Numbered from the stretch's first letter, positions 1,381-52,161 are shown. The stretch is DNA of 64,000 nucleotides from IMGVR_UViG_3300032516_000001:1-64000; one strand, 5' to 3'. Notes: generated by a model from the sequence alone, not told the origin. Translations and numbers: made by a program.

Positions 1381-1411
1381 AAATTTAGCATATTGTTGTG
1401 TACGATAATTT

Positions 1412-1735
1412 ATGAATTTCCTACTGATTCTCTTCCTGATAGTGCTTCCAACTCTCGATGTTTTTAATCAGGGGCCTGAGAGGCTACAGGCGTCTGTCCA
1501 ACCACAGGTAGCACCTGTCAAGGCACAAATCGATTGCTCTGGACTCTTGTCCCAACGAGAATTTGGGCAGATTGATGGTCATCGGATCATGGTGAATGGC
1601 CAGTATGCCGTAGGTCAGTTTATCGGTAAAAGCTTTGTTCCGGTGTTGTACTTTAACACACTGGATGAGGCGACTTCTTGTGCTCCAGATATGGAAGTAG
1701 CTAAGTGGCATAACGGGACTTGGGTACACCCTTAG
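1412..1735 (+). CDS. Hypothetical secreted or membrane-anchored protein
   Basis: Hydrophobic N-terminus MNFLLILFLIVL; TACGAT-N5-ATG upstream. Confidence 0.65.
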   Translation: MNFLLILFLIVLPTLDVFNQGPERLQASVQPQVAPVKAQIDCSGLLSQREFGQIDGHRIMVNGQYAVGQFIGKSFVPVLYFNTLDEATSCAPDMEVAKWHNGTWVHP

Positions 1736-1782
1736 TGTCTAAAAGAAACAACAGCACCAAAAGGAGACGTCAGGTTGAATTA

Positions 1783-2235
1783 ATGAAAGTTAAAAATATA
1801 TATAAAATGCTTGGCATAGCTGGACCGATAGGTCCGATGCCGCAGGTATACAATGGTATTGAATGCGTCGTATCACACTTCAAATCATGCCTTCCGAAAT
1901 TCGTTCAGAGAATTTATTTAATAAGCTTACCAACCGTGTCCATCTTTACATGGAAGGAAGTCATTTACGATGACTCGGAATGGCACGACACAAATGCTTT
2001 CCCGATCAAAATCTTTTGTATTATGCACAGAAGACTATCATGTTCATGTAAGAATTTATATATTTTACATATGTGTCTTGATCCTGATGAAGGCATAGCG
2101 ATTGCTATGGGCGGTAGGCGACAGCCTAATACTTGGCAATACAATCCTCATTCATGGTGTGTGCGCATATGCGCTAAAGAAGCCATGAAAAAGAAAATTG
2201 ATGAGTTTTCAGTTTATCATATACACGAAGCCTAG
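1783..2235 (+). CDS. Hypothetical protein, C-terminal tag family
   Basis: ATG at 1783 preferred; ends SVYHIHEA. Confidence 0.55.
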   Translation: MKVKNIYKMLGIAGPIGPMPQVYNGIECVVSHFKSCLPKFVQRIYLISLPTVSIFTWKEVIYDDSEWHDTNAFPIKIFCIMHRRLSCSCKNLYILHMCLDPDEGIAIAMGGRRQPNTWQYNPHSWCVRICAKEAMKKKIDEFSVYHIHEA

Positions 2236-2251
2236 AATGTAAGTTTTAAAG

Positions 2252-3676
2252 TTGGGTAAAAATTTCAAAGAATTCCCAGACCTGACCGGCGAGAAGTTTG
2301 GTAAATTCACAGTCATATCTTTAGTAAAAGTGGATCCTAATAATGGGCGAATTTGGCTAGTTAGATGCGATTGTGGACAGGAATCATACAAGTCTACTTG
2401 CAAAATTAACACATTAAAGAAAAATAAAACACCAACAGCATGTAATAAATGTCGTGTTAGAGGACGAGATATTACTGGTGAAAAATTTGGCAAATTCACA
2501 GTCATATCTTTGAAAGGCGTTGATGCGAAGAAAGGACGAATTTGGCTAGTTAGATGCGATTGTGGACGGGAATTCCATAAATTTGCGGGACAAATAACCT
2601 CATTAAAGAAACGTACTGCGTTTCCAATGTGCAGGAAGTGTCGTGTTAAACAACGAGATCTAACAGGAACGAAAATCGGTAAATTCACAGTCATCTCTTT
2701 TGACAGGATGGACGAAATCCGAGGTCAAATGTGGCTGATTAGATGTGACTGCGGAAATGAGATATATAAATCTACTGGTGATATTACCGATCTGTCGAAA
2801 CATACCGATCCGGCATGTATTGAATGTGCCAAAATCAGAAGAAAAACGTGGGCGTGTAAAGACATAACGGGACAGAAGTTTGACAAATTAATAGCAATTA
2901 AACCAATTGGCGGTAGCAAATATGGCCAAATGTGGCTAGTTAGATGCGATTGTGGTATTGAGACGCATCGTGTTGTCAGCCAATTGAATGCAGGACGTAA
3001 GGCTGAACGTGGCCAGATGTGTATTGAATGCAGAAATGCAAAATTCGCCGAGAGTAGAGATCGTGGGTCTAGCACTAGTTACAGATTAGATAGAATAAGA
3101 TTAAGAAAGATGGCTGGACCATTAATATTGGAGATGGATCCACTCATAGATCAAAATCTAGGATCGCATGAAGCATTTCGGAATGAGCTAATGTATGATT
3201 TGGAACAGGAAATCTGTCCTCGCCGTGGTTGGCTGGATGAAAGAGAAATTCCCGGGTTGAGTGCAGATTTTGATGACACTATTACAGCTAGCAATTTTCC
3301 GGAATATGTCGATGTAAATATAGAAAGACCGGAAGTACAAATTGAGAACGAATTAGATGAGGATGATGACGAGATGATATACAGAGTTAGGCCAGACGGA
3401 ACTATCGAAACCGACAATGTCGAAGAAGCTTTACGTCTATCTCGTATATTAAGCAATGCTCCTGAGCGGACAAGAGCTACGGAACAAGAAATCATTGATA
3501 CCGTCCAGAGATTCTTTGCAAATCAACAATTCACATCTAAACAGTTGTCCGATAAGTTGGGATTCGATTCGGGTACTGCCGTTAGAGAGGGACTGAGACT
3601 TCTTCACATCAAGAAGTGGATTAAGAAACACAGAAGCAGCGATGGCACATGCTTCGTATGGGAGCTAGTTAAATGA
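2252..3676 (+). CDS. Protein with four DxTGxKFGK..W.xRCDCG repeats and probable C-terminal winged HTH
   Basis: Four ~70-aa repeats of the type found N-terminal to phage HNH/AP2 endonucleases; C-terminus FTSKQLSDKLG..VREGLRLL looks like a wHTH; no nuclease motif seen. Confidence 0.7.
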   Translation: MGKNFKEFPDLTGEKFGKFTVISLVKVDPNNGRIWLVRCDCGQESYKSTCKINTLKKNKTPTACNKCRVRGRDITGEKFGKFTVISLKGVDAKKGRIWLVRCDCGREFHKFAGQITSLKKRTAFPMCRKCRVKQRDLTGTKIGKFTVISFDRMDEIRGQMWLIRCDCGNEIYKSTGDITDLSKHTDPACIECAKIRRKTWACKDITGQKFDKLIAIKPIGGSKYGQMWLVRCDCGIETHRVVSQLNAGRKAERGQMCIECRNAKFAESRDRGSSTSYRLDRIRLRKMAGPLILEMDPLIDQNLGSHEAFRNELMYDLEQEICPRRGWLDEREIPGLSADFDDTITASNFPEYVDVNIERPEVQIENELDEDDDEMIYRVRPDGTIETDNVEEALRLSRILSNAPERTRATEQEIIDTVQRFFANQQFTSKQLSDKLGFDSGTAVREGLRLLHIKKWIKKHRSSDGTCFVWELVK

Positions 3677-4482: not shown

Positions 4483-4504
4483 ATCTCAAGCGGCCAATAA
4501 AATT

Positions 4505-5665: not shown

Positions 5666-6313
5666 CTAAGATTGCGGGAACAGTTTTAGCTGCTTTCCGT
5701 GTTGCTCGATTCTAATACCTTTGATGATTCCTTTGAACAACCAAACAGATAGGCTTTGCCTTGCAGATGCGTTAGTTGCATAATGATGACTGAGTTGCTT
5801 GATAGCGTCATCAAGAGCGATCCCCGGTTTAGATCCGACTAAATACCTAAGAGCATCGCACGTAGACTGAAAAGGAGTCCATCTTTGTCCGAATCTCGAT
5901 CCGGCTTTACAATAGGTCTTATGTTCTGGTCGTAATGAATTAAGAATCTTGGTAGCCTCTGATTTTCTGTGTAATGGAGCATTTTCTTGCTCACGCACAC
6001 TCATCGTTTTCTTGTTTACCAATAATACTCCGAATCCGTAGTCTCGGCATATTCTATACGCGAAATGTCTGGCACTATCATGTGAATATGGGACCGCAAT
6101 ATATATGTAGTTTGCCAATCTTTTCCATCCATAAGCCTGGTGCAGTAAGCTGATGGTTAGTGATGTTTTAACTTCGACGACAGTAACAATTTTACCTAAA
6201 ACAGCGATAATGTCAGCGCATCCTCCGCAGATTTTGACTTCCTGATATACATCATATTTTTGATCTTCAAAATACGCTATGACTGGTTCAGCCAGTTCAA
6301 CTTCACTTGGCAT
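5666..6313 (-). CDS. PD-(D/E)XK nuclease-like protein
   Basis: YQEV..ADIIA..VVEVKTSL...QA motif. Confidence 0.75.
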   Translation of the reverse strand: MPSEVELAEPVIAYFEDQKYDVYQEVKICGGCADIIAVLGKIVTVVEVKTSLTISLLHQAYGWKRLANYIYIAVPYSHDSARHFAYRICRDYGFGVLLVNKKTMSVREQENAPLHRKSEATKILNSLRPEHKTYCKAGSRFGQRWTPFQSTCDALRYLVGSKPGIALDDAIKQLSHHYATNASARQSLSVWLFKGIIKGIRIEQHGKQLKLFPQS

Positions 6314-6357
6314 GTTTCACCGTACGATGAGATAAACGATTAAATGTATGATATCAT

Positions 6358-6726
6358 ATGCAAACTAAATTTTACTACATAAGAGACAAAAAATTGTTTC
6401 CTATTGCCTGTATCGCGTTCTCTCGAGAAAATCGCGATAGCCTATCAATTAAATACGGATGGTCAGTATATCATCCGAATGATACCTTCGATAAGAAACG
6501 GGCGAGAGCAATTGCTGAAGCCCGTATGAATAAACTACAGTATTCGACACAAGCTGCCGAGCCGAAGGTTAACGCAGTACTTGATGCTATTTTTGCCGAC
6601 TTGTTCAAGATTAACGAACTACAAACAGTATGCGGATCTGACGGGCCTGATCTCCCATATCTTCCATCCCGCATGCTTAAACAATTAAAACGAAATATTG
6701 ACAAGAAACGTGCGGCCGTTGTATAA
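6358..6726 (+). CDS. Hypothetical phage protein
   Basis: HPNDTFDKKRARAIA motif; TATGAT-N5-ATG upstream. Confidence 0.7.
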   Translation: MQTKFYYIRDKKLFPIACIAFSRENRDSLSIKYGWSVYHPNDTFDKKRARAIAEARMNKLQYSTQAAEPKVNAVLDAIFADLFKINELQTVCGSDGPDLPYLPSRMLKQLKRNIDKKRAAVV

Positions 6727-6800
6727 TATCTTATAGGTGCGATGTTGCACCTAATCCCAGGCTTCGCGCCCGGGATAAACTCACTAACGGCGAAGGCCAA

Positions 6801-8202: not shown

Positions 8203-8232
8203 CAATGAGGGCCCCGTACGGGGCCCTCATTG
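8203..8232. terminator. Perfect 30-bp palindrome, probable terminator or operator
   Basis: CAATGAGGGCCCCGTACGGGGCCCTCATTG is its own reverse complement. Confidence 0.7.
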
Positions 8233-8243
8233 TAATTTGTGAT

Positions 8244-8480
8244 ATGAAGATAATAAAACTAGGGAGTTGGTTTGTTTCAAATCCTCAAGTTTTGCAAAGA
8301 CCTAATCGTTCAGATATAATATTCTTAAATTTACCAAATACTCCGTCGCCGTTTCCAAAAATCGGGCTTACAGCAACGATACATATTGAAGCCCAAGCTG
8401 GTTATGGGAAGGACTGGCTTATTCAAAATTTTGGATTTGAAGAATCTGATATTGAATTCTGTAAATCCAATATCCATTAA
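8244..8480 (+). CDS. Hypothetical protein
   Basis: TAATTT-N5-ATG at 8244. Confidence 0.6.
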   Translation: MKIIKLGSWFVSNPQVLQRPNRSDIIFLNLPNTPSPFPKIGLTATIHIEAQAGYGKDWLIQNFGFEESDIEFCKSNIH

Positions 8481-19086: not shown

Positions 19087-19494
19087 TTCTTGTTGTTTGG
19101 GCAAAACTATTTGATCCAGTGGTATTTTTGGGTCGAATGAGACATGACCCTCATTGGGGTTATCCCAGTCCCATCTCCAATCGCCATTCAAATGATCGTT
19201 TCTATAGCACCATTCGATTAAGAAGAACTGACCAATTTTTCCAATTATTGGATTTTGTTTTATTATATTTAGATGCGATATTAAATGATCTAGCATATTA
19301 TCTGATAACCGTCTCATGAGTTCACGAGGTTCCTCATCCCCGATGGGCATCATCCCCATAACGCAAATTTGCATTAGCGCATCGACTTCAACATCCGGTA
19401 GTGTAGTATCCTTAGGCACCAGCTTAGCTATCATGGCTTTTAATACATTAATTATGGAATTCTGTAGTAACGTAACATTTTGAGCGGTGATCAT
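19048..19494 (-). CDS. Hypothetical protein
   Basis: TAAAGT-N6-ATG upstream. Confidence 0.6.
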   Translation of the reverse strand: MITAQNVTLLQNSIINVLKAMIAKLVPKDTTLPDVEVDALMQICVMGMMPIGDEEPRELMRRLSDNMLDHLISHLNIIKQNPIIGKIGQFFLIEWCYRNDHLNGDWRWDWDNPNEGHVSFDPKIPLDQIVLPKQQELSTQIEKHSHKS

Positions 19495-19840
19495 AATGAA
19501 ACTTTACAACAATGAGTATCTGATACTGAAATCATTTGGATATGGAGTGTATTTGGCGGAGTATATGTGCCCCGTCAGGAATAATGAAATATCCAATATT
19601 CAAATGAGAAACACAATACTAGATCTGGTTGGTTTAAATATAAAAGAAATAGTCATAGATTTGAACGTATCGAACCGGGCTTTTATTTTGACTACTGATG
19701 GCTCACCCACTTGTACTTTGGAAAAGAATCAGATGTCATCTATTGAGCTAGCTTACTTAGATGGAATCGCACAAATTTCGAGTCAAGAGTTCATTGATCG
19801 AGTTAAACTCGTTAAAAAAGTATTTTATTCAACCGAATAA
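19487..19840 (+). CDS. Hypothetical protein (start uncertain)
   Basis: ORF only. Confidence 0.45.
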   Translation: MIIMKLYNNEYLILKSFGYGVYLAEYMCPVRNNEISNIQMRNTILDLVGLNIKEIVIDLNVSNRAFILTTDGSPTCTLEKNQMSSIELAYLDGIAQISSQEFIDRVKLVKKVFYSTE

Positions 19841-20000: not shown

Positions 20001-20282
20001 ATGCCCAAGAACAAAGGCAAAGAATTAGTATATTTAGGCCCTGAAATTGGTAATTCTCGAGTCATATTCAAGCCAACTGAAGAACAGCTTGAAATTGGCA
20101 TTGTCTGTAAAATTGAAGACGGCAGAGATATTTCTAGCTATGATTTAATCAGTCTCGAGCCGTGTAAAAAGGGGCCAGGATATTATATGCGATATTTGTA
20201 TAAAGGCCCGGCTAAAGGCCCGGCTAAAATATCAACTGAAGCCTACAGATCCGGTTGGGACCGCACTTTCAGTCTAAATTAG
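20001..20282 (+). CDS. Hypothetical protein
   Basis: TATAAT-N7-ATG; 12-bp duplication encoding KGPAKGPAK; ends YRSGWDRTF. Confidence 0.7.
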   Translation: MPKNKGKELVYLGPEIGNSRVIFKPTEEQLEIGIVCKIEDGRDISSYDLISLEPCKKGPGYYMRYLYKGPAKGPAKISTEAYRSGWDRTFSLN

Positions 20283-20327
20283 ATACTCTTAATTGTAATT
20301 TTAAACGTTAAACTGAGGCCCAAAAAA

Positions 20328-22884: not shown

Positions 22885-22919
22885 CCGTAAATTCCGATAT
22901 CCAGCAAGTAAAAACCGAG

Positions 22920-24332
22920 ATGAGCACTTCCTATAAATACGTCACTCAGCGCCTAGGCGATAATCACTATATCTTGTCGGCGCGAGATGACATGAAAGTT
23001 GATGTTCACGCATATTTGTCTGATGAACTCTTTGCGAAGTCAGAAGACGAAATGTGGAATCAGGCGGCCAATGGCGCTTCCTATGAAGGCGTCACTGGTG
23101 CTTATCTGATGCCCGATTGTCATTCTGGCTTCGGCGTTCCCATAGGTTCTGTCATTGTAACTGAAAATACGCTAATTCAAGCCAGCGTCGGTTTCGATAT
23201 CAGCTGCGGCATCTTGCACATGCGCGTTACTGGATTGTCGGCTTCTGGAGTAAGAGGTCGATATAATCGAGAGCGCTGGATTCATGAAGTTGAGAAGCGC
23301 GTGGCTCTTGGCGTCGGTTCGCACCGCCCTGAACTCATGCCAGAGTTCACAAAGGACAAGCTCGAAGAGATTTTGCGTTTCGGTGGTAAGCCGATCGGAG
23401 TCGATCCGAATGTTTGTGAACGGTTATTTATTCCGGTGTCAGAAGATGCAAATCTGAAGAGAATTCCGGAGGCTTACGACAGGGCTCTACCTCAGCTTGG
23501 GAGCCTCGGTGGCGGCAACCACTTCTGTGAATTGCAAGTCGATAAGGATGATGGCTCTGTATGGGTCATGATTCATTGCGGTAGCCGTGGTTATGGATAC
23601 CAAACTGCGGAACATTACTTCTACGAAGGAGCGAATGCACGCGGAATTGTTAGTAATCGTCGGGGTCTGTCATGGCTTCGTGAAGATGAGGATCTCGGGA
23701 AGGAGTACTGGGATCATCACAATAGCGCTGCTAATTACGCCATAGCCAATCGACACATCATAGCCAATAGTGTACGCGAAGCTTTGCAAGAGGTATTCAA
23801 TGCTGACGGTGAAGTTTACTACGAAATCAGTCACAATCTCGTTCAAAAAGAGACCTTGGTTATGCCTGATGGTACGACTAAGGCCGGGTACGTTCACCGT
23901 AAAGGCGCAACCCGCGCCATGCCGGCAAATCACCCGGATTTAGTTGGATCAGCGTGGAGTAAAATTGGAAATCCATGTCTTATTCCGGGGTCCATGTTCG
24001 AGGGAGCAGCAATTTTGATGCCTAACGCTGGGGCTCACCAGACCGCTTGCTCTGTAAATCATGGATCAGGGCGAGTTATGGCTCGTGGAGCGGCCAAGCG
24101 TAAGCTCGAGCACAAGCAAGAACGAATTGACAAGGAAATGCACGATATTTCCCGTCAATTCAATGGCGTCACGATTGAGGGCATCGTAACGAATGCTAAG
24201 CACATTCCTCTCGATGAATGCAATGCAGTATACAAAGATCTTGATACGGTTGTTAAGGTGCTGCAAGATTCCGATATTGCAACTAGGAATCGTAGGTTGT
24301 ACCCTGTGGCTGTAATCAAGGGAACTGATTAA
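22920..24332 (+). CDS. rtcB: RNA ligase RtcB
   Basis: MPDCH.G.G.PIG, VGFDISCG, LGSLGGGNHF.E, HCGSRG, HN, HRKGAT, PGSM, HGSGR, DE....YK. Confidence 0.95.
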   Translation: MSTSYKYVTQRLGDNHYILSARDDMKVDVHAYLSDELFAKSEDEMWNQAANGASYEGVTGAYLMPDCHSGFGVPIGSVIVTENTLIQASVGFDISCGILHMRVTGLSASGVRGRYNRERWIHEVEKRVALGVGSHRPELMPEFTKDKLEEILRFGGKPIGVDPNVCERLFIPVSEDANLKRIPEAYDRALPQLGSLGGGNHFCELQVDKDDGSVWVMIHCGSRGYGYQTAEHYFYEGANARGIVSNRRGLSWLREDEDLGKEYWDHHNSAANYAIANRHIIANSVREALQEVFNADGEVYYEISHNLVQKETLVMPDGTTKAGYVHRKGATRAMPANHPDLVGSAWSKIGNPCLIPGSMFEGAAILMPNAGAHQTACSVNHGSGRVMARGAAKRKLEHKQERIDKEMHDISRQFNGVTIEGIVTNAKHIPLDECNAVYKDLDTVVKVLQDSDIATRNRRLYPVAVIKGTD

Positions 24333-32504: not shown

Positions 32505-32568
32505 ACCATCAATTGGTTTCATAATCATAACTGGGGTAATTAATATAACTTTTATACACCATTTTAAT

Positions 32569-37031: not shown

Positions 37032-37415
37032 ATGGCTGATATTGATGGACTCCACTTATTAGTTGATGGACAAGTTGAAGATACTTCAGTCTTTGCCCAA
37101 GACAATATAGACCAGTTACTAAGACGTTTAGTCATCGACTTAGATATGGAGTTACTTCTTGAACCTCAGTTTAAAGAAGTGGCATTGAATCCGGCAGAAC
37201 TTGAGAAGGATGGGTTCTCCGATGATGGTGGCCTTTCAGCATTTTGCATGATTTCAACTAGCCACATATCAATTCATGTATGGCCATTACGAGCTGTATT
37301 TATGGCCGATATTTTTAGCTGCAAGAAGTTCGATGCTCCAAAGGCTCAAAGAACCGTCATAGAGTTCCTGCACCCAACTAGCCTAAAAATTCAGTCTATA
37401 TCTCGTTCCCCGTAA
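37032..37415 (+). CDS. speD: SpeD/AdoMetDC-like pyruvoyl-dependent decarboxylase
   Basis: GLHLLVD..GGLS..ISTSHISIHVWP..DIFSCK.FD. Confidence 0.85.
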   Translation: MADIDGLHLLVDGQVEDTSVFAQDNIDQLLRRLVIDLDMELLLEPQFKEVALNPAELEKDGFSDDGGLSAFCMISTSHISIHVWPLRAVFMADIFSCKKFDAPKAQRTVIEFLHPTSLKIQSISRSP

Positions 37416-37444
37416 ATCTATCCATTGTTCACGTATTCCGGGGT

Positions 37445-38155
37445 ATGAGAACCCCGGAACCAACGGAATCGATCCTACAACCGAGTCACCCGTCGTACGG
37501 ATGTACTCAGGCTTGGTTCGTATTCGGTGTCTTGAACCCGGCAGGGGATATCACCAGGGTCTTGATCGTCGAAGCCAAGAACATCTGGGCTGTTCAAACG
37601 CTGGAGCGAGTGTCCAACAAGGATAACAGGGTCAATGACCACTGCGAACTCATGACCGTCGGTAGGCAGTGCGCCAGCCTTGGCACTCGCTCAGATAGAG
37701 CAGTCGAAGTGTCATATGTCGACTTCCTCATCGATATCGTCGAACCTCACCGGCTTGTCGAAGATCATTACATCGCAACGACATTCGATCGGTCCCTGAC
37801 TGATGCCGATCGAGCATATGCAGCTAAAAAACTGGAAGCATTGGAGAAGCAATCCCGGGTACCGGAGCAGGTACCGGAGCAATCTATCCCTGACCTGACC
37901 GAGGCTGAGTTGGAAGCGCTCTACGATGAAGATGCCAAGCAGCAGGCCGAGCAGTCAGCCGCACCGGTAATGAATAAGTTCCTCAGTGATCATTATTCGA
38001 TTCAGACGTCGTCTACTCATCATAGAGTGACTGCGGCTCTGCTCGACTTGGGCTTCAAGAAGCAGCAAATCGGCCAAGTCATGGGTGAAATTGATGCTAG
38101 CGGAACAGTAGAGAATACAGTCAAATTGGCACTACAGCAACTCAACGTGAGGTAG
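37445..38155 (+). CDS. Hypothetical protein with C-terminal RuvA domain III-like module
   Basis: Ends VTAALLDLGFKKQQI...TVENTVKLALQQL. Confidence 0.7.
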   Translation: MRTPEPTESILQPSHPSYGCTQAWFVFGVLNPAGDITRVLIVEAKNIWAVQTLERVSNKDNRVNDHCELMTVGRQCASLGTRSDRAVEVSYVDFLIDIVEPHRLVEDHYIATTFDRSLTDADRAYAAKKLEALEKQSRVPEQVPEQSIPDLTEAELEALYDEDAKQQAEQSAAPVMNKFLSDHYSIQTSSTHHRVTAALLDLGFKKQQIGQVMGEIDASGTVENTVKLALQQLNVR

Positions 38156-38503: not shown

Positions 38504-38992
38504 ATGACGACCGTAATCATAGGATATGGCCCTCTTTCGGAGGTACACCCGTATATTCCAGAATTTATAATTCTGCAAACCGACGATAATATCATTAAAC
38601 TTGGACAAGATCAACAGAGAGTCAATTTAACTCCGAAGACCCTGGATGACTTGATAGCAAGCAAACAAGTGAAGTTATTTGACGGAAGTGCAGAATATTA
38701 CTCAGATCAATGGATAGCTATTGAATGCGATGCACCAATTATACTGGCTAGATTCCCACTAGCTGAGAATCAAAAATGGGCAGTCGGGCGGGCTTCTAAG
38801 TTAATTGAAGAATCTTTTGCATTTAGCCACAAGGAGCCACTAAAAGCCATATCAGTCCTACAGATTGCCGCTGGACTGTGTAAGATAGAATTGTCTAAAT
38901 TAGTTCAAGCTTTAGAAGCTAAACGTAAGGATCCCTCGGAAAAATTAGAAACCATCTTGCTAAGAATCAAATCAGAACTATCGAAGAACTAG
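38504..38992 (+). CDS. Hypothetical protein
   Basis: ORF only. Confidence 0.6.
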   Translation: MTTVIIGYGPLSEVHPYIPEFIILQTDDNIIKLGQDQQRVNLTPKTLDDLIASKQVKLFDGSAEYYSDQWIAIECDAPIILARFPLAENQKWAVGRASKLIEESFAFSHKEPLKAISVLQIAAGLCKIELSKLVQALEAKRKDPSEKLETILLRIKSELSKN

Positions 38993-39049
38993 AGGGTGAA
39001 ATGAAGGTTCACGAACTCGTATCTCAATTGTCAAAATTTGATTCTTCGG

Positions 39050-40256
39050 TGAAGCGGTGAGTACCATATGTGTGTGCGCAGCAGGGCACGCTTTCGACGG
39101 CGAGAAAGGTGGTTGCCCGATGTGTGTTGATAGCAAGACGGAGCCGCGGGAGGGATAGGCGATGGACGACAAGGGACGTATTCACCAGTTGACTGAGGAA
39201 GAACACGCCGCGCTGATAGCCAAAATCGAGGCCGGCTCCAAGCCGCGCATGGTTCCAGTGCCGAGCGAATCGGTGGGCAAGATCATGGCGCAGAGTCGGC
39301 ACGAACTCCAGGCACTACACGGACCCGTGACATGCCCGGAGTGCGCTCGAATCGGTTTCGACTCCTGTATGCCGATGGGTCGTGGGTGTCTATGCCCAGA
39401 GTGCGAAGAGGAGCAGCCATGAGCGAGCAGAACGGAAGGACGAGTGCAGACCCACGAGAGGTAGCCGCCCTGCGCGCCGAGGTCGAGCGGCTGCGCATGA
39501 AGGCCGGGCGACTACAGGCCCGCGTCTCCGTGTTCATGCAGGCGATGGGCTGGCTCGCCCGCAACGGGCACCAGGTACGAGCCCAGCGCTGGATTGCGCG
39601 CGCCGACGAGTCTGCGGCTGACGTGCGGCCCGAGGACTTCGTTGTGGCGAAGCCATGTGCCCTCGCCACGCCCAAGGCGCCGGCCGAACTCGTCCGCCAG
39701 TCGCCGCCCGCTGCGGTGCGCGATGAGAAAGGCGGTGCGCGATGACGCCGCCGAGCAACGAAGTCTGGCTATTCCCGACACGACCCGGTGAGCAAGAGGA
39801 CAGGATGGGGCGCAAGGGGTGGACAGCCCTTTGGGTGTCGTATGGAAAGCCGCGCGCACAGTGCAGTTTCACGCAACTGGCCAAACTGCAATCGCAGACC
39901 GGGTGGTCCGGTAAGAAGGTGATCGTGCTCGACAAGGACCCAACATGAAGACGACGGCGAAGACGCAGCGCATCGATGCCGCAATCAGAAGGCTATGCAG
40001 ACGTGACGCGCGGCTCACCAAGCTGGAGCCAGAGTTGGAGCGCGCCTTCCTCGTACGCGAGGAGCTGGCCAGCCTACACAAGGCCGCCGCTTTGGTGCTG
40101 CTGAGGTATCGAAAGGAACGAAACCTAGCTACGGCCATGGCTGCGCTGGACGAAGCGGACGAGGCAGCAGGCGCCACGCTCGCCCGCCAGTCGCCGCCCG
40201 CTGTGCCGACCACGAAAGGAGCCGCAAAGTGAAAGTCTACGTAGCGAGCAGTTGGA
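39050..40256 (+). mobile_element. High-GC foreign insertion carrying five small phage-like genes
   Basis: Abrupt switch to GC-rich sequence; overlapping ORFs 39057..39158, 39162..39422, 39419..39745, 39742..39948, 39945..40232; truncated ORFs at both edges. Confidence 0.8.
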
Positions 40257-40473
40257 GTACTATATTGAACATATACAGTATAAAGGCAATGAACGCTACT
40301 ATTCGATGATAACGCTTCTTGGTGTCTCCGGCCTCTAGTAACACAGCCGCTACACATATCAACTGTGCAATCCAATAAATAACCGACTCGTATTTGAAGT
40401 TATTCTTAATATGGGTAATGGCGATTAACGTTGACATCCATACCAAAACGATCAAGTCCTTCATATTTATCAA
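40237..40473 (-). CDS. Small membrane protein
   Basis: Hydrophobic segments. Confidence 0.5.
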   Translation of the reverse strand: MINMKDLIVLVWMSTLIAITHIKNNFKYESVIYWIAQLICVAAVLLEAGDTKKRYHRIVAFIAFILYMFNIVLQLLAT

Positions 40474-40889
40474 TTCTTTGTCATATCAGAATCTGGCTCA
40501 ACATTTTTCTCAATAGAGCCAGTATTTGGGATACCAAAAAGGGTGATGAATGCCTCCTTATTCTCGCCACTCAGGACACTAAGAAACTTCTGGGCAAGTT
40601 CCGGATTTGAACGAATTTGGCGAGCATATCTACCAATCCGCGGATTGTTGTTGAACACAATACGACATCTCTTACATGCGCCGTAAATCAGGTCATGATG
40701 AACTTCACTACAAAGTGAGCATTTCCCAGTATATACGGTCCCCATAGATTCCTCCGGAGGAGGAGGATTCTTGGCAAAAGACTTCTTATATTCTTGAAAT
40801 AACTCCTTGGTTGCCGCCCTGCATTTTTCACATTCACCATCGGTCAGAGGACCTGTTACCCCACATTTGCATTCACCGTGTGTCGTCAT
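40470..40889 (-). CDS. Cys-rich hypothetical protein
   Basis: Several CxxC; TATAAT-N5-ATG. Confidence 0.7.
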   Translation of the reverse strand: MTTHGECKCGVTGPLTDGECEKCRAATKELFQEYKKSFAKNPPPPEESMGTVYTGKCSLCSEVHHDLIYGACKRCRIVFNNNPRIGRYARQIRSNPELAQKFLSVLSGENKEAFITLFGIPNTGSIEKNVEPDSDMTKN

Positions 40890-40924
40890 AATATATTATA
40901 CGTGCTTATATTTTTAATTTACGC

Positions 40925-41182: not shown

Positions 41183-42074
41183 AACGATTACTAGAGAAAT
41201 TGCTGATTGGCGTCGATTTATTAATACGTCGTCTAGTAATATCCGCAGACTTAGCGCCGTCCAATTTACCTTCACGACGCCATCTAGTTATTCGTTTCCT
41301 GTTATTGATTAAATCTAACTCCATTCTGCTTAATGATCGAAATTTTTTCATCTTATGACTAACGCAATTATCACAATACTTTGCATATCTTTGACTTGCG
41401 AATCGATCAGATAGTGGCCCACCACACTTTTTACACAATGGTGGAACCCAAGGGTCAGCCGGCGCTTTATACTCGAAGCATGGAACCATTAATGGCCTGA
41501 TCATGTCGAGAAATCTTGCTGCATTTTTATGTTGTAAAACTAATATAGGCTGACCACGCCAGTGATTGATAAAGTTATGAATACCTATATCATCAAATTT
41601 GTCCGACAATAATTGTACATCTTTTTCAGTAAACCCATTCGTGTGTAATTTAACTTCTAGTCTTCCACGTGGGGTTGAAACATTACCATCACCCATATGC
41701 CAGTTAGCAAGTATAACTGGATCCGATAAATTTATATTCTCCGGTACAATCTTCTTTCCGTTAGGATACCATCTTTGTCTTTCTGACACAAATTCGATAT
41801 ATGAATAGGTCCATATTTTCACTTCATTCCTTTGATCATAAATTTTCATGTTGTTGCCAACATGTTCATCATCGAATAATTTCTTTAGCGAGTATATCCA
41901 ATCCGTATGGCCTACGCATTGTCCCAAAGAAAATGAAGCAGAGTGCATAGATTGCTGGATGTAAGATCCATCGCCAAGTAGACACCCATCCAATGCCGCC
42001 AGAAGTTTCGGACTGAGGGACACTGTCTTTAAACTCTTTCGTGGCCCATCGATATACCACCCAGGAGGCTTCAT
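41175..42074 (-). CDS. Free-standing two-motif LAGLIDADG endonuclease
   Basis: LDGCLLGDGS..WYPNGKKIVP..LANWHMGDG..LHTNGFT..YK. Confidence 0.9.
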   Translation of the reverse strand: MKPPGWYIDGPRKSLKTVSLSPKLLAALDGCLLGDGSYIQQSMHSASFSLGQCVGHTDWIYSLKKLFDDEHVGNNMKIYDQRNEVKIWTYSYIEFVSERQRWYPNGKKIVPENINLSDPVILANWHMGDGNVSTPRGRLEVKLHTNGFTEKDVQLLSDKFDDIGIHNFINHWRGQPILVLQHKNAARFLDMIRPLMVPCFEYKAPADPWVPPLCKKCGGPLSDRFASQRYAKYCDNCVSHKMKKFRSLSRMELDLINNRKRITRWRREGKLDGAKSADITRRRINKSTPISNFSSNRFN

Positions 42075-47745: not shown

Positions 47746-47994
47746 ATGAACAACGAATGTGAATATTGCAACAAGCCTGGAGAACTCAGAGTCTCCAAAG
47801 GTGAAGGCGGAATTGATAGGGATGTATATGTATGCAATTCCTGTTGGAAGTTATTGAAAGATCCAAGGACGGCTCTTCCCTTACTTAGAGGCCATCTGAC
47901 ATTGAGTCAACGCGGAATAGCGAACCCTGAACAAAATGAAAAATCATTAAATAAATTCATGGGAATCATATCTACCTGGAAACCTCAAAATTAA
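47746..47994 (+). CDS. Small Zn-finger protein
   Basis: CEYC..CNSC. Confidence 0.6.
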   Translation: MNNECEYCNKPGELRVSKGEGGIDRDVYVCNSCWKLLKDPRTALPLLRGHLTLSQRGIANPEQNEKSLNKFMGIISTWKPQN

Positions 47995-48629
47995 CTTATC
48001 GCAGGGGCATAATCGATCATTTGACTACGCATGTCTCTAATAACCTTTGTGGTAATCTTTCGTCCACCCCAACTCATAGCTTCGCGAATTACATCTGGTG
48101 GAGCACCACTTCTAGTTGCTCTGATGTACCGTGCAATATCCCACATTCCGATATTTCTGAAATGTCCCTCGATATCCTCTAGATGAGCATGAAAATCATC
48201 TCTATCTTCCTCAATATCAACAGTATCTAATAGAGTTCGATCATCGTCTTGCCCCACGGGAGCATCTATTGATTCTTTTTCCTTTTCAAATCTCTTTTTC
48301 TTATGCACTAAATTGATACACACATTATTGGCAACCATAAATACATAGTGCCCAAAACTGGATTTCTTAGGATTATGGGCAGATCTTGTGTAATTTTTAT
48401 GTAATATTGCTACAAATACCTCTTGCAATAATTCATTCATCGATATTTCAGGAACTTTAAAGTGTTTGTATACTATCTTAATAATATCTTTACGTTTAGC
48501 TTCAACATCAATTCCTAATGATGTACCATCTTCAGCACACCTCGGCCATTGTAATTTTTCACCAGGATCTATAATGGGCTCATTTAAAATTTTAACCTTT
48601 TTGATACCTTTAAATCTTCGGATGTTCAT
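47991..48629 (-). CDS. Sigma-70 family (ECF-like) phage sigma factor
   Basis: Region 2-like ELLQEVFVAI..NPKKSSFGHYVFMVANN..INL; SIDAPV. Confidence 0.75.
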   Translation of the reverse strand: MNIRRFKGIKKVKILNEPIIDPGEKLQWPRCAEDGTSLGIDVEAKRKDIIKIVYKHFKVPEISMNELLQEVFVAILHKNYTRSAHNPKKSSFGHYVFMVANNVCINLVHKKKRFEKEKESIDAPVGQDDDRTLLDTVDIEEDRDDFHAHLEDIEGHFRNIGMWDIARYIRATRSGAPPDVIREAMSWGGRKITTKVIRDMRSQMIDYAPAIS

Positions 48630-48662
48630 GCTTGCCCCTGCACTACATGTAGCCCCAAAGCC

Positions 48663-48920
48663 ATGGTAAAGTCAACCGGAAACTTAATTTTACCACAATT
48701 TCAGATTCAATGCAAGGAGAAAGTAAGCGTGAACGGTTTGAATGACCATTGTGATAGGGTGTTAGCGGTTATTAAACAGGGGATTTACAGACAGTCCCAA
48801 ATAATCAAAAAAACCTGTTTGGGTCCAGATCAGGTATCGGCAGCATTGCGTATGCTTAGAAAGAGTAAAATTATTGAAAAGATTGATGGGGAACATAGGC
48901 CATTACAGCATGAACTCTAA
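48663..48920 (+). CDS. Small winged-HTH protein
   Basis: SQIIKKTCL..DQVSAALRMLRK..II. Confidence 0.55.
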   Translation: MVKSTGNLILPQFQIQCKEKVSVNGLNDHCDRVLAVIKQGIYRQSQIIKKTCLGPDQVSAALRMLRKSKIIEKIDGEHRPLQHEL

Positions 48921-49500: not shown

Positions 49501-50296
49501 TAATTTAGCAATCGTTCTTGCGAAAGGTGGGGAACTAGCTGAACAAGCTGAAAAGAAGTTACTAGCGGAGTATCTAATACTAATTCGAACACAACTAGAA
49601 ACTAGCGTTAAATTACAAAAAGCGGTAACTGATTCTGATCCGGCGACTGAGGCTAGAGGAAAAGTAACTCAATATTTATCGAAGCATATTAGACCTGGGA
49701 CGATAGAAGTCTTTCGTAAAGCTGTAGAACAGATTCTCTCGGAGCTAGACCAACTTCGGACTAAAAAGCCTAGCTTGTATCTAGTGAATCAAGCTACTGG
49801 CGAACTGGTGATGCCTATAAATAAGGATCTCATTTTTACACCACCGGATTATATTGGAGCAGACGGGCAGCTGCATAAATCAAATCCCATTGTTCACCCA
49901 GGGGTGACATCTTCTCTGGCATTAGCTATTCACAAGCAAGCCAAAACGAATAAAGCGATCGCGAAATCTAAGAAGAACAAAGCTACTGAACAAGCGTATG
50001 CACATATATCCGACCCAAATAAAATAATTGAATTGACTAAAGAAAAACTTCAAACTGCTGGTATTGAAATAGACAACGACTTAGATTCTGACAGTCAAAT
50101 AATTGAATTTGGACGAGAACAATCGGATGGAATATTTCAATCGTCCAATCTTCACTTTCACAGAATTCAGGTATTTTCTTCAACTCTGGCTCATAAAATA
50201 GTAAAGCTAAATCCTAGAAAATGTGCATTTGGTAAACTAGAGATGAAACATAATTCAAAACAGCAGTGGTATACTGTTGAGGTGCGACTAATGTAA
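49460..50296 (+). CDS. Hypothetical protein
   Basis: 278 aa ORF. Confidence 0.7.
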   Translation: MMTMKSKQNPEWGDNLAIVLAKGGELAEQAEKKLLAEYLILIRTQLETSVKLQKAVTDSDPATEARGKVTQYLSKHIRPGTIEVFRKAVEQILSELDQLRTKKPSLYLVNQATGELVMPINKDLIFTPPDYIGADGQLHKSNPIVHPGVTSSLALAIHKQAKTNKAIAKSKKNKATEQAYAHISDPNKIIELTKEKLQTAGIEIDNDLDSDSQIIEFGREQSDGIFQSSNLHFHRIQVFSSTLAHKIVKLNPRKCAFGKLEMKHNSKQQWYTVEVRLM

Positions 50297-50305
50297 ATTG
50301 CCTAT

Positions 50306-50563
50306 ATGTTTATCATAAGATATATTAAAACATGCATTTTAAGAATTAGGAACTCTATTGAAGATATTCTCAATGGAGGACAAGCATTTGGTGATGAATA
50401 TGACGATCTTATTGACCTCGATGATGGTGATATCGATGGTGAACCGACGCCTCCTAGGTATCCATGTCCAAAATGTGGTAAGGAAACCAAAGAGCACCAA
50501 ATTTCAGGTACTCGAATTTGTTCATGTTGTCGTCAAATATCTGTTCATGTTGTCGTCAAATAG
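50306..50563 (+). CDS. Small Zn-ribbon protein
   Basis: Shares PRYPCPKCGKETKE module with 203..646; TAAATT-N6-ATG. Confidence 0.6.
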   Translation: MFIIRYIKTCILRIRNSIEDILNGGQAFGDEYDDLIDLDDGDIDGEPTPPRYPCPKCGKETKEHQISGTRICSCCRQISVHVVVK

Positions 50564-50565
50564 TT

Positions 50566-51078
50566 TCAGGAGATTAAATTAAGAATTCTGGCCAATACTG
50601 CAGCTAATGCATATCTGAATTCAGGGACTCCTGGTAATTCGCTGTCATTCAATCCTAATAGAATTTTTGCCATATCATCGATTTTACTTCTAAATTGAAA
50701 TACCACATACGTTCCTAATGGTAACATTGCAGTTAAATCTGTCGGAAGATTAGTTGCTTTCGATATTTCAAAGAATAAATTAAGAATCTCTTGTAGTTTT
50801 TCCTTGATTTGAGTATTTGCTTCATTTGGTAGTCTTGGATATTGATCTACCAAAGCAGTATTGAATCTATCAGGCGCAAGAGTTGGCATCCAAATCGCAA
50901 TCGGATTTTTTACAGAATAATCATTTACTATTCCAATACCGGATATTGTGGGAAGTATTGTCTGCATTATGTAGCATGGAATGCATATTTTCAATGCTAC
51001 TTCTCGTTCTTCCTTATCATAGTTAACTATTGATATTCCACCAAATTCAAATAGCGGAAAATTATCTTGGGGATCCAT
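50566..51078 (-). CDS. Hypothetical protein
   Basis: TACGAT box upstream; LPLGT..F motif weakly ThyX-like but unconvincing. Confidence 0.6.
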   Translation of the reverse strand: MDPQDNFPLFEFGGISIVNYDKEEREVALKICIPCYIMQTILPTISGIGIVNDYSVKNPIAIWMPTLAPDRFNTALVDQYPRLPNEANTQIKEKLQEILNLFFEISKATNLPTDLTAMLPLGTYVVFQFRSKIDDMAKILLGLNDSELPGVPEFRYALAAVLARILNLIS

Positions 51079-51084
51079 ACTCTA

Positions 51085-52161
51085 TTATCGTACACCCATA
51101 GCTTGCAGCATGTTTTGCCGAAATTCTGGATCCGCCCAGCGAGCCTTCATAGCTTCTGATATCTTCATCTTGGTTTCCGGATCATGTTTTTTCATTTTTG
51201 CCCAATAAGCTTTCGAAGCTTTCAGTATTTTGGCCCTAATTTCTGGGCTATGCGGTTTCGCTTTCATTTTATTGACGGTGGCGATTTTGTCTCGATAACT
51301 TGGGTCGGACATTCTCTTTTCCAAAGAATTCATAATCTTCTGCCGAAATTCTGGATTTGTCCAACGAATTTTCATGGCTTCCGATATCTTCATCTTAGTT
51401 TCCGGATCATGTGGTTTTGCTTTAATTTTATTAGAAGCCGCTATTCTCTCCCTGACATCAGGACTATTTAGTTTTTTCTTAATTAAATCTGAAGTTTTTT
51501 GTCGAAATTCAGGATCAGACCACGATTTCTTTAAGGCTTCCGATACCTTTGCAATATGCTCTGGAGAATGCATCTTCCCTTTCCTGGCTTTGGACATTCT
51601 TGCGCAAAATTCTGGGGTTCGTATTTTTCCTTTGTTTCCATTGGATATTTTTTCTTTGACCTCTGATCTAGCATTGACTTGTTTAGAGATCATGGACATC
51701 TTAGCTACAAATTGCGGATCGCTCCACATCTCTTGACTAGCCTTGGACCTTCGAGCCTGAACTAAGGGATCTTTGAGCGATGCATTGACCGAAGCTGTAA
51801 CTCTAGCTCTAAAATCTGGGTTATTCCACGGATTCTTCCTAATCGGATGCGGTTTATGTTCACCTCCCCTTGCCAAATTAAACCCAAATTGCGGATCTCT
51901 AGTTTTATAAAATTCAATCCATTTTTCTTCGGCTAAATTGGCCGCTTCTAATGTGTTACATACTTCCAAAACTCCATGTGAAAATGCATCTCTACCGTAT
52001 TTACGGATGGCGTTAGGAAAATGCCAGCGACCTCCTTTAGTTGATTTGGCAGCACATATATGGTTCCGCCATCTCTTCTCCATAGTCTGAGAAGTCATCC
52101 CAATATAACGGCGCCCAGAATCAATATGTGTATGATAATAGATCGTCCAGTGTTTATTCAC
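51085..52161 (-). mobile_element. Free-standing GIY-YIG endonuclease, copy 4
   Basis: WTIYYH..RRYIGMT; duplicated HDPETKMKISEAMK.RW..PEFRQ repeats. Confidence 0.9.

What the first reader, a model, noticed from the sequence alone, without database searches (positions are those of the whole stretch)
1399..51095. Widespread leaderless-type architecture: G-TAnnnT 5-6 nt before the start codon
Seen: TACGAT-N5-ATG (1412), TAAGTT-N6-TTG (2252), TACGGT-N5-ATG (6313 minus), TATGAT-N5-ATG (6358), TAATTT-N5-ATG (8244 and 10343), TAAGCT-N5-ATG (14272), TAAAAT-N5-GTG (14868 minus), TACTGT-N5-ATG (15716), TAAAGT-N6-ATG (19494 minus), TATAAT-N5-ATG (40889 minus), TAAATT-N6-ATG (50306). All are preceded by G, mostly TG or CG, and lack an obvious SD. 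Known: a -10 box this close puts the transcription start at the start codon. Inference: many genes are self-contained leaderless units, easing gene shuffling and perhaps resisting host shut-off of SD-led translation.
Basis: partly seen in the sequence, partly recalled or inferred. Interest (0 to 1): 0.6.

Follow-up and report, generated by a model that had tools for sequence, protein, structure and literature searches.

The report
Leaderless-type promoters of a megaphage
About one gene in six of this giant uncultured phage, and of its relatives, has a short promoter-like box (aaTGTAnnnT) exactly 5-6 bases before the ATG. Transcripts should therefore begin on the start codon with no ribosome-binding leader; this layout is known from some bacteria and one Thermus phage, but here the box resembles those read by phage-encoded sigma factors.

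Summary
All 12 sites exist. GTAnnnT-N5-ATG occurs 20 times in the window against 9.0±2.9 in shuffles. In an unbiased scan of about 42,000 word/offset pairs it is the strongest upstream signal of the 241.6-kb genome (29 of 253 starts against 0.8 expected).

The same holds in two complete relatives (377 and 427 kb) and in 12 further related loci with GC from 34 to 63%.

The signal applies to ATG, weakly to GTG, and not to TTG. A pyrimidine precedes the start in 85% of cases. The motif is rare at tight operon junctions, is kept at orthologous genes, and also sits 10 nt before a tRNA and a tmRNA gene. It is therefore a promoter element, not a ribosome signal.

It is not a generic TAnnnT box: without the G there is no enrichment. 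The core aaTGTA matches the AATGTA promoters of phiEco32's own sigma (gp36) and the GT(C/A) -10 core of ECF sigmas. The window's 212-aa protein models as a two-domain ECF-like sigma and has a canonical sigma-70 promoter upstream.

No RNA data were listed, so leaderless starts are inferred. About 16% of genes are affected, and roughly a third of those are single-gene blocks. Verdict: a new variant of a known kind.

The parts
1400..1414 (+). GTACGAT-N5-ATG; start of ORF 1412-1735 (107 aa)
   Evidence: class LL5
2239..2254 (+). GTAAGTT-N6-TTG; start of the HNH endonuclease ORF 2252-3676. Doubtful member, because the TTG class is not enriched
6311..6325 (-). GTACGGT-N5-ATG; start of ORF 5666-6313 (215 aa). 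Back-to-back with the 6358 promoter; the two start codons are 44 nt apart
6346..6360 (+). GTATGAT-N5-ATG; start of ORF 6358-6726 (122 aa)
8203..8232 (.). 13-bp GC-rich hairpin (terminator-like on both strands) that ends where the 8232 box starts. It leaves no room for a -35 element
8232..8246 (+). GTAATTT-N5-ATG; start of ORF 8244-8480 (78 aa)
10309..10345 (+). Bipartite form: CGTAAAT (10309-10315), a 15-nt gap, GTAATTT-N5-ATG (10331-10345); ORF 10343-10591
14260..14274 (+). GTAAGCT-N5-ATG; ORF 14272-14688 (138 aa); only 13 nt after the upstream gene
14866..14880 (-). GTAAAAT-N5-GTG; 61-aa ORF 14683-14868. It is divergent from 14900(+), which has the same box at a spacing of 9
15586..15603 (+). 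TGTACAGT followed by 10 nt before the mature 5' end of tRNA-Sup(tta) at 15604-15679: the box in front of a non-coding gene
15704..15718 (+). GTACTGT-N5-ATG; ORF 15716-16549 (277 aa)
16901..16915 (-). GTATGAT-N5-ATG; ORF 16538-16903. The box lies inside the 3' end of the upstream gene
19492..19507 (-). GTAAAGT-N6-ATG; ORF 19048-19494 (148 aa). Its ortholog in relative G002 has the box at N5
22886..22922 (+). Relaxed bipartite form before RtcB (22920-24332): CGTAAAT, a 15-nt gap, GTAAAAA-N5-ATG. The last T is replaced by A
37411..37447 (+). Relaxed bipartite form: CGTAAAT, a 15-nt gap, GTATTCC-N5-ATG; ORF 37445-38155
40887..40923 (-). Bipartite form: CGTAAAT (40917-40923), a 15-nt gap, GTATAAT-N5-ATG (40887-40901); ORF 40470-40889
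50293..50308 (+). GTAAATT-N6-ATG; ORF 50306-50563 (85 aa)
55005..55019 (-). GTACAAT-N5-GTG; likely true start of DNA polymerase A (52185-55007). The protein aligns from residue 1 with the G002 ortholog, which has the box at N6 before ATG
47991..48629 (-). 212-aa two-domain (sigma2 + sigma4-like) ECF-like sigma factor, conserved in all relatives; the candidate reader of the box
48687..48715 (-). Canonical sigma-70-type promoter TTGCAT-N17-(TGg)TAAAAT, 57 nt upstream of the sigma gene's ATG. The G002 ortholog has TTGCGC-N17-(TGc)TAGAAT

Best explanation
The box (consensus aaTGTAnnnT) is a single-element, -10-type promoter placed so that RNA polymerase starts about 6 nt after its last T. That position is the A of the ATG (spacing N5, less often N6). 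The first cistron of about 16-19% of transcription blocks would then be made as a leaderless mRNA, translated without a Shine-Dalgarno site. Downstream cistrons use overlap coupling or SD sites. The same promoter drives the phage's suppressor tRNA and its tmRNA with a 4-5-nt leader.

The most likely reader is host core RNA polymerase carrying the phage's own ECF-like sigma (47991-48629). That gene is itself expressed from a canonical host-type promoter. A subset of promoters adds an upstream CGTAAAT box at -35-like distance.

Shown here: the motif, its spacing, its statistics, its conservation, its context, the sigma fold, and the absence of a recognisable phage RNA polymerase.

Inferred: that it is a promoter, that +1 falls on the AUG, and which sigma reads it. 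My odds are about 0.65-0.7 for 'promoter giving leaderless or near-leaderless mRNAs', and about 0.45 that the phage sigma rather than a host sigma reads it.
For: Positional enrichment:
- Window: 20 against 9.0 +/- 2.9.
- Genome: z 6.8.
- Top-ranked upstream word in three genomes: 29/253, 21/521 and 56/654 against 0.8-2.1 expected.
- The spacer distribution is one base sharp.

Properties expected of a leaderless start:
- Enriched for ATG, weakly for GTG, and not for TTG or CTG.
- A pyrimidine at -1 in 85%, 75% and 74% of cases, against 50-59% for other genes.

Properties of a promoter rather than a ribosome signal:
- Rare where genes abut: 4/47 against 88/206.
- Precedes the tRNA, the tmRNA and a tRNA of G002 at 10-11 nt.
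- Sits directly after terminator-like hairpins.

Under selection:
- Orthologs keep the box and its spacing while flanks differ, with odds ratios of 7-14.
- N-termini align from residue 1.
- Enriched in 12 more related loci with GC 34-63%: after removing a duplicate locus, N5 is 47 and N6 is 36, against a mean of 26.

Link to a phage sigma:
- G, T and A are each essential, whereas plain TAnnnT is not enriched.
- ECF sigma -10 cores are GTC or CGT, with a flipped 'master nucleotide' that can be A.
- phiEco32 gp36 reads a single element tAATGTAtA and starts 6-8 bp downstream. Phage 7-11 gp47 reads GTAAtg-N16-aCTA.
- The window's sigma models as sigma2 plus sigma4. Its best matches are ECF sigmas and the gp36 complex, with Z 5-7.6.
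- Canonical TTGACA/TATAAT promoters are not enriched in any of the three genomes, yet one stands before the sigma gene.
- No RNA polymerase beta subunit or single-subunit RNA polymerase was found in the two complete relatives.

Precedent:
- A TANNNT box 6-7 bp before ORFs is an experimentally validated leaderless promoter in Deinococcus.
Against: - No transcription start is mapped; no RNA run could be listed.
- In E. coli-type numbering, N5 puts +1 one base closer to the -10 element than the usual optimum.
- The first 40 nt of these genes are only marginally less structured than those of other genes.
- The sigma link is circumstantial. The fold Z-scores are below 8. hhalign to phiEco32 gp36 gives only 9% probability. 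Every related locus was found through the sigma gene, so there is no sigma-less control.
- The box stands before small early-looking genes, replication genes and large unannotated genes alike. If the phage sigma reads it, almost all transcription would have to wait for that sigma.
- The host is unknown, so a host sigma with this specificity cannot be excluded.
- The gene calls are home-made.
Confidence: 0.62

Rival explanations
1. The architecture is the same (a promoter on the start codon giving leaderless mRNAs), but the box is read by the host's own primary or alternative sigma, and the phage sigma serves another gene class.
For: - The box precedes early-looking small genes at both ends of the contig, as well as replication genes and large unannotated genes.
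- No other promoter-like word is enriched in non-coding DNA.
- Canonical promoters are scarce.
- phiYS40 leaderless promoters and the Deinococcus TANNNT boxes are read by host holoenzyme (and my own recollection of Sevostyanova 2007).
- A TAnnnT shape with A and T four bases apart fits group-1 sigma pockets.
Against: - The absolute need for G directly 5' of TA is not a described feature of housekeeping -10 elements.
- The extended -10 form TGnTAnnnT is not enriched.
- The few good sigma-70-type promoters in the genome look E. coli-like, and one stands before the sigma gene.
- The box is constant across relatives with GC 34-63%, which probably infect different hosts.
Confidence: 0.25
2. The box acts at the RNA level. 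It would be a non-SD translation signal, the binding site of a phage translational regulator, or a processing site that cuts polycistronic RNA just before the AUG.
For: - It is locked to the start codon at single-base resolution.
- It occupies the place of an SD site.
- Leadered copies are few.
Against: - It precedes tRNA and tmRNA genes, which are not translated from that point.
- It is depleted at operon-internal junctions, where a ribosome signal would be needed most.
- The GTAnnnT shape, with three free positions, resembles sigma -10 elements and is not complementary to the 16S 3' end.
- The -35-like partner at a fixed 15-nt gap (GTAAA-N16-GTA) makes sense only for DNA recognition.
- A processing site cannot be fully excluded.
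Confidence: 0.1
3. It is a chance or compositional effect of AT-rich intergenic DNA, or copies of one duplicated cassette.
For: - The genome is 41-42% GC.
- Two sites (148396 and 214354, outside the window) are identical duplicated copies.
Against: - No shuffle reaches the observed count.
- Other spacings serve as an internal control.
- The strongest relative enrichment is in 56-63% GC relatives.
- Flanks of the sites are unrelated to each other.
- Plain TAnnnT is not enriched.
Confidence: 0.02

Closest known systems
-10 motif adjacent to ORFs in Deinococcus-Thermus (Zhong et al. 2025, PMC12340547); also Actinobacteria, and GeneMarkS-2 'group C' genomes (the last two from my own knowledge)
   Same: - A -10-type box a few bp before the start codon, with no SD.
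- It coexists with a GGAG-type SD class.
- It covers a sizeable fraction of genes (about 30% there, about 16-19% here).
- It was validated there as the promoter of leaderless mRNAs.
   Different: - There the motif is TANNNT at 6-7 bp and is read by the host RpoD.
- Here plain TAnnnT is not enriched, GTA is obligatory, the modal spacing is 5, and the genome is a phage's.
Thermus phage phiYS40 middle/late transcripts
   Same: A large phage that makes most middle and late mRNAs without leaders (review PMC3594737).
   Different: - phiYS40 infects a host in which leaderless genes are common. It is reported to shift IF2 and IF3 levels.
- Here the host is unknown and no IF genes are encoded.
- The promoter sequences could not be compared because the primary paper is not held.
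- phiYS40 is not among the 15 listed polA matches; kinship was not otherwise tested.
phiEco32 gp36-dependent middle/late promoters, and phage 7-11 gp47 late promoters
   Same: - A phage-encoded, very divergent sigma of about 214 aa on host core polymerase.
- A single-element promoter tAATGTAtA (AATGTA centred at -11.5), with starts 6-8 bp downstream.
- Phage 7-11 uses the bipartite GTAAtg-N16-aCTA.
- Early genes, and in those phages the sigma cascade, depend on host sigma-70.
- Here the consensus is aaTGTAnnnT, the predicted +1 lies in the same range, and a CGTAAAT upstream box is optional.
   Different: - There is no detectable specific homology between the two sigmas: hhalign gives 9% probability and tblastn finds no hit.
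- Those promoters are not reported to sit on start codons.
- The spacer of the bipartite form differs by about 2 nt.
- Those are about 77-kb podophages of enterobacteria.
ECF (group 4) sigma promoters
   Same: - The -10 core is GTC or CGT(A), with a preferred C/G just upstream and a flipped master nucleotide that can be C, T, A or G.
- The sigma has two domains, sigma2 and sigma4.
- The model of the window's protein matches ECF sigma2 and sigma4 domains.
   Different: - Most sites have no AAC-type -35 element, and many promoters leave no room for a -35 box.
- Region 4 is not detectable by sequence.
- No anti-sigma factor was identified.
Jumbo phages phiKZ and AR9
   Same: Giant phages with their own transcription programme.
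   Different: - They carry their own multisubunit RNA polymerases.
- Their 5' UTRs are 26-491 nt (AR9), and no leaderless transcript was found in phiKZ.
- Here no RNA polymerase genes were found, and start-codon-adjacent promoters dominate.

Membership tests
Leaderless gene architecture (-10 element adjacent to ORF) | A -10-type motif at a fixed short distance (about 5-7 nt) from the start codon, enriched over background | tested here: met
Leaderless gene architecture (-10 element adjacent to ORF) | Primary transcript 5' end on, or within a few nt of, the start codon | not testable with these tools
   No RNA run was listed. Inferred only from geometry and from the pyrimidine at -1 followed by a purine at +1
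Leaderless gene architecture (-10 element adjacent to ORF) | Start codon AUG (or GUG), as needed for 5'-terminal start recognition | tested here: met
   Enrichment for ATG, weakly GTG, and none for TTG or CTG. ATG makes up 81-96% of the class
Leaderless gene architecture (-10 element adjacent to ORF) | The motif is the housekeeping TANNNT box | tested here: not met
   [^G]TAnnnT at N5 or N6 is at expectation in all three genomes
ECF-type sigma / promoter pair | A -10 core of the GT(C/A)/CGT type, with a specific base directly 5' of it | tested here: met
   G, T and A are each essential, and T or C precedes G. Compared
ECF-type sigma / promoter pair | A conserved -35 element (AAC-type) at 16-17 bp | tested here: not met
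   No -35 signal in the class as a whole. Only a subset has CGTAAAT (GTAAA-N16-GTA: 10 against about 1.6)
ECF-type sigma / promoter pair | A sigma with sigma2 and sigma4 domains only | tested here: inconclusive
   All 14 family members match Pfam Sigma70_r2 and none matches region 4. In the AF2 model, residues 26-120 match ECF sigma2 (Z 6.3-7.6) and residues 140-212 match sigma4 domains (Z 5.4-6.3). All Z values are below 8
ECF-type sigma / promoter pair | The sigma actually directs transcription from the box | not testable with these tools
   Needs in vitro transcription or genetics
phiEco32 gp36-like phage sigma system | A single-element promoter containing AATGTA, with the start 6-8 bp downstream | tested here: met
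   The consensus is aaTGTAnnnT. The predicted +1 leaves the A of GTA at -10 or -11, against -9 to -11 in phiEco32. The start itself is inferred
phiEco32 gp36-like phage sigma system | The sigma is homologous to gp36 | tested here: not met
   hhalign probability 9%. No tblastn hit to Kuravirus genomes. Only a shared sigma fold (9m7y_F, Z 6.4)
Jumbo-phage own-RNA-polymerase transcription (phiKZ/AR9 type) | Phage-encoded beta/beta'-like or single-subunit RNA polymerase | tested here: not met
   PF00562 and PF00940 are absent from G000. PF00562 is absent from the complete relatives G001 and G002. The one DFDGD motif found is not conserved. Very divergent polymerases could still be missed

The most novel reading that the evidence does not exclude
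A whole clade of 0.36-0.43-Mb phages (spanning GC 34-63%) runs most of its gene expression through a private channel. Its own two-domain sigma would read aaTGTAnnnT and place +1 on the AUG. Phage messages would then need neither host sigma-70 promoters nor Shine-Dalgarno pairing. That would be an expression system orthogonal to the host's in both transcription and translation initiation, and portable with each gene, including homing endonucleases.
Probability: 0.33. Interest if true: 0.75.

Novelty: new variant of a known kind. Interest (0 to 1): 0.55.

Why it matters
- **Annotation.** In these huge uncultured phages the box pins the true start codon of about one gene in six. An example is DNA polymerase at GTG 55007 rather than the longest ORF. 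SD-based gene callers will misplace such starts.
- **Biology.** Leaderless expression has been documented for bacteria of a few phyla and for phiYS40, while the studied jumbo phages phiKZ and AR9 show none. A megaphage clade that uses it systematically, with a box resembling phage-sigma promoters, gives a testable case of a virus coupling its own promoter specificity to SD-independent translation.
- **Tools.** A 10-nt element that supplies both transcription start and translation start, together with a 212-aa sigma, would be a compact orthogonal expression part.
- **Ecology.** The motif is conserved across GC 34-63% and could serve as a signature for recognising this clade.

Tried and rejected
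- **RNA evidence.** The look-up of sequencing runs listed no RNA run.
- **Close relatives.** There are none in the phage collection by DNA. The DNA polymerase finds only distant hits.
- **Host.** The RpoD-like sigma of G002 finds only 29-37% matches in genome contigs. The Atlas taxa are uninformative. The tmRNA tags (ANDNAVRVAA, ANDNASLAIAA) are not decisive. The host stays unknown.
- **Own RNA polymerase.** PF00940 and PF00562 are absent. A DFDGD motif in one 1770-aa protein of G001 is not conserved in its orthologs. Six giant proteins have no PHROG match, and two are collagen-like tail fibres.
- **Translation factors.** No IF1, IF2 or IF3 genes were found.
- **Canonical promoters.** TTGACA-N16-18-TATAAT and TGnTAnnnT are not enriched.
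- **Unsupervised motif search.** The EM search timed out once and then drifted to diffuse solutions that still contained GTA at -12. I relied on the exhaustive word/offset scan instead.
- **5' RNA structure.** The difference is only marginal.
- **Homology to phiEco32 gp36.** Not supported.
- **Solved structures.** A sequence-profile search found nothing.
- **Literature.** No paper mentions a GTANNNT promoter. The phiYS40 primary paper is not held.
- **Not used.** The large protein searches were not needed.

Full report
**What the window is.** The 64-kb window is the first quarter of a single 241,648-bp viral contig. IMG/VR classes it as linear and CheckV estimates it as 57% complete. It encodes a family-A DNA polymerase, a UvsX-like recombinase, a DnaB-like helicase, RtcB and many HNH and GIY-YIG homing endonucleases. 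It also encodes collagen-like tail fibres of up to 3960 aa. GC is 38-47% along the window. No close relative is in the phage collection. Two complete relatives with terminal repeats were found in IMG/VR: G001 (376,674 bp, 51% GC) and G002 (426,960 bp, 40% GC). Their DNA polymerases are 58-61% identical to the window's. I fetched both in full.

- All twelve sites are as described.
- In the window, GTANNNT-N5-ATG occurs 20 times against 9.03 +/- 2.94 in dinucleotide-preserving shuffles; no shuffle reached 20.
- In the genome, the count at N5 is 69 against 30.6 +/- 5.6 at other spacings.
- I called genes with a simple self-trained codon-usage caller, giving 253 genes. I then scanned every 4-mer and every XYZnnnW word at every offset from -60 to -1, about 42,000 tests. 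GTAnnnT at -12 ranks first, with 29 genes against 0.8 expected (p 2e-35). This is ahead of AGGA at -11 (12 against 1.0). GTAnnnT at -13 (N6) has 9 against 0.8.
- The same word ranks first in G001 (21 and 14 of 521) and in G002 (56 and 35 of 654).
- The raw spacing spectra agree: G001 has 62 and 43 against about 21, and G002 has 107 and 72 against about 51.
- The enrichment is therefore real and not a product of AT-rich DNA. It is relatively strongest in relatives with 56-63% GC.

Two limits apply. N6 is not enriched as a raw count in this window. 'Widespread' means 17 of about 105 genes in the window and 47 of 253 in the genome.

**What the motif is.**
- Aligned sites give aaTGTAnnnT.
- Each of G, T and A is indispensable. 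[^G]TAnnnT, G[^T]AnnnT and GT[^A]nnnT at the same place are at chance level. The last T can be replaced at reduced enrichment. It is therefore not the generic TANNNT box of leaderless genes in bacteria.
- About ten sites in the genome add an upstream CGTAAAT box at a fixed distance (GTAAA-N16-GTA: 10 against about 1.6). In the window these are 10343 and 40889, with relaxed forms at 22920 and 37445. Most sites have no -35 signal. At 8232 a terminator-like hairpin occupies that space.

**Promoter or ribosome signal?** Several independent lines favour a promoter.
1. The box is rare where genes abut or overlap (4/47 against 88/206). It is common after gaps of 11-40 nt and between divergent genes.
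2. The only two non-coding RNA genes of the genome each have TGTAnnnT 10 nt before the mature 5' end. These are tRNA-Sup(tta) at 15604 and a full-length tmRNA at 82453-82791(-). A tRNA of G002 has it at 11 nt.
3. A partner box at a fixed DNA distance makes sense only for a DNA-binding reader.
4. No complementarity to the 16S 3' end is apparent, whereas the SD class of these phages is the ordinary GGAGGTGA.

**Leaderless?** The spacing to the start codon is sharp to a single base. For TGTAnnnT in G000 the counts are 24 at N5, 4 at N6 and 0-4 elsewhere, against about 0.25 per position of background. Leadered copies are few. Such locking is expected only if the start codon must coincide with the 5' end.
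- The enrichment holds for ATG (z 6.8-8.9), weakly for GTG (z up to 2.6), and not for TTG or CTG. This fits both a purine-initiating polymerase and the AUG dependence of leaderless translation.
- The base before the start codon is a pyrimidine in 40/47, 38/51 and 90/122 class members, against 50-59% of other genes (p 7e-4, 2e-3, 2e-6).
- Orthologous genes keep the box and its spacing while the surrounding bases differ. The LL/LL excess has odds ratios of 13, 7 and 14. The proteins align from their first residues.
- Divergent pairs have start codons only 20-44 nt apart, for example 6313/6358. In G002 some are as little as 13 nt apart, which leaves no room for leaders.
- None of this is a mapped 5' end. 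No RNA run was listed.

**Who reads it?**
- No multisubunit or T7-like RNA polymerase was found in this contig. No beta-subunit domain (PF00562) was found in the two complete relatives. The one DFDGD motif seen is not conserved.
- Canonical TTGACA/TATAAT and extended -10 promoters are not enriched in any of the three genomes. No other promoter-like word is enriched in non-coding DNA.
- The 212-aa protein at 47991-48629 is conserved in all relatives (55-62% identity across 14 members). All 14 members hit Pfam Sigma70_r2 and none hits region 4.
- Its AlphaFold model has pLDDT 76 and two helical domains. Residues 26-120 match the sigma2 domains of ECF sigmas: Bartonella RpoE (Z 7.6), E. coli sigmaE region 2 (Z 7.0; Foldseek probability 0.95-0.97 for the complex with its -10 DNA), and SigK, SigC, SigW and SigR. 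Residues 140-212 match sigma4 domains (Z 5.4-6.3). The phiEco32 gp36 open complex also appears (Z 6.4). All Z values are below 8, but the list is almost purely sigma factors.
- ECF sigmas read -10 cores such as GTC. They prefer C-G directly upstream and flip a 'master nucleotide' that can be C, T, A or G. An engineered sigmaE region 2 was solved bound to GTAAAA.
- Most tellingly, phiEco32's own sigma gp36 reads a single element tAATGTAtA, with AATGTA centred at -11.5 and starts 6-8 bp downstream. Phage 7-11's sigma reads GTAAtg-N16-aCTA. With +1 on the A of the ATG, the present box puts the A of GTA at -10 (N5) or -11 (N6), inside the phiEco32 range.
- The sigma gene itself lacks the box. It has a good host-type promoter, TTGCAT-N17-TGgTAAAAT at 48687-48715, 57 nt upstream. 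The G002 ortholog has TTGCGC-N17-TGcTAGAAT 70 nt upstream. This suggests a cascade from host sigma to phage sigma to the GTA promoters.
- Against this: the two sigmas are not detectably homologous beyond the family fold. All related loci were found through the sigma gene, so there is no sigma-less control. The box serves early-looking, replication and large unannotated genes alike. I put the phage-sigma reading at about 0.45 and a host sigma at about 0.25.

- About a third of motif genes are single-gene blocks. The rest head blocks of 2-12 genes whose later cistrons overlap or use SD sites.
- Six of the 47 motif genes are free-standing homing endonucleases. This fits 'portable units' but does not prove it.
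- Nothing supports or refutes a link to shut-off of SD-led translation. The phage encodes no IF1, IF2 or IF3, and many of its own genes, including most of the largest ones, use SD sites.

**Comparison with what is known.**
- A -10 box 6-7 bp before ORFs is a validated leaderless promoter in Deinococcus-Thermus, covering about 30% of genes.
- phiYS40 makes leaderless middle and late mRNAs.
- The studied jumbo phages AR9 and phiKZ have long leaders and none of this.
- No paper in the library mentions a GTANNNT promoter.
- The finding is thus a new variant of a known architecture. It has a different obligatory core, a modal spacing of 5, probable reading by a phage sigma, and clade-wide use in 0.36-0.43-Mb phages.

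**Limits.**
- The gene calls are my own.
- The host is unknown.
- No RNA data were available.
- The structure matches are of middling strength.
- The sum counted one duplicated locus twice, and I corrected it by hand (N5 47, N6 36, mean of other spacings about 26).

Noticed in passing
window 15604-15679 (+): A suppressor tRNA with anticodon tta, which reads UAA. Relative G001 also has a tRNA(tta), and G002 has a tRNA(tca). ORFs are long under code 11, so there is no sign of genome-wide recoding. Its role is open.
   Followed up: partly
G000 82453-82791 (-), outside the window (L048:2453-2791): A full-length phage-encoded tmRNA (Rfam RF00023, 106 bits) with the tag ANDNAVRVAA. G002 has one with the tag ANDNASLAIAA. 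Both complete relatives carry about 37-38 tRNA genes.
   Followed up: partly
window upstream of 27727, 29515 and 52161(-); also G000 220560(-) and 224974(+): A paralogous family of about 240-360-aa GIY-YIG homing endonucleases shares a conserved 5' flank, TTATAGGAC followed by 8-10 nt and GTG. This is a second repeated upstream element, either their own promoter or part of the mobile unit.
   Followed up: no
window 6698-6727 (+): The only perfect TTGACA-N18-TATAAT in the genome lies at the end of ORF 6358-6726, about 70 nt before the HNH gene at 6801. Good sigma-70-type promoters also lie at 10595-10623 (+) and at G000 234292-234300 (-).
   Followed up: partly
window 2252-3676, 32485-34338 and 55014-56528; G000 84564(-), 133741(+) and 164818(-): At least six large (474-617 aa) proteins match the HNH homing-endonuclease families. 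Five of the six (all but 2252-3676) also match phrog_1384 ('Mom-like DNA modification protein') in their C-terminal part. This is an unusually expanded family.
   Followed up: no
G000 148396(-) and 214354(-): Two GIY-YIG endonuclease genes share an identical 50-nt upstream region and N-terminus, which points to recent duplication or homing within the genome.
   Followed up: no
window 38992-40470 and 20282-21117: These stretches have no confident gene call but many overlapping ORFs on both strands. They may be non-coding RNA, a repeat region or mis-called genes.
   Followed up: no
G002 65859-67049 (-) (L028:5859-7049): Relative G002 also encodes a 396-aa RpoD/RpoS-like sigma (RpoD_Cterm, 205 bits), and G001 a 247-aa group-3-like sigma. 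Neither was seen in the 57%-complete G000.
   Followed up: partly
G000 199684-211566 (-) and 93222-98132 (-): Collagen-repeat tail-fibre proteins of 3960 and 1636 aa. Six further proteins of 1150-1800 aa have no PHROG match.
   Followed up: partly
window 19487 (+) / 19494 (-); G002 around 41955-41970: Divergent genes whose start codons overlap or lie about 13 nt apart. Each gene's box then lies inside the other gene's first codons, giving face-to-face overlapping promoters.
   Followed up: partly
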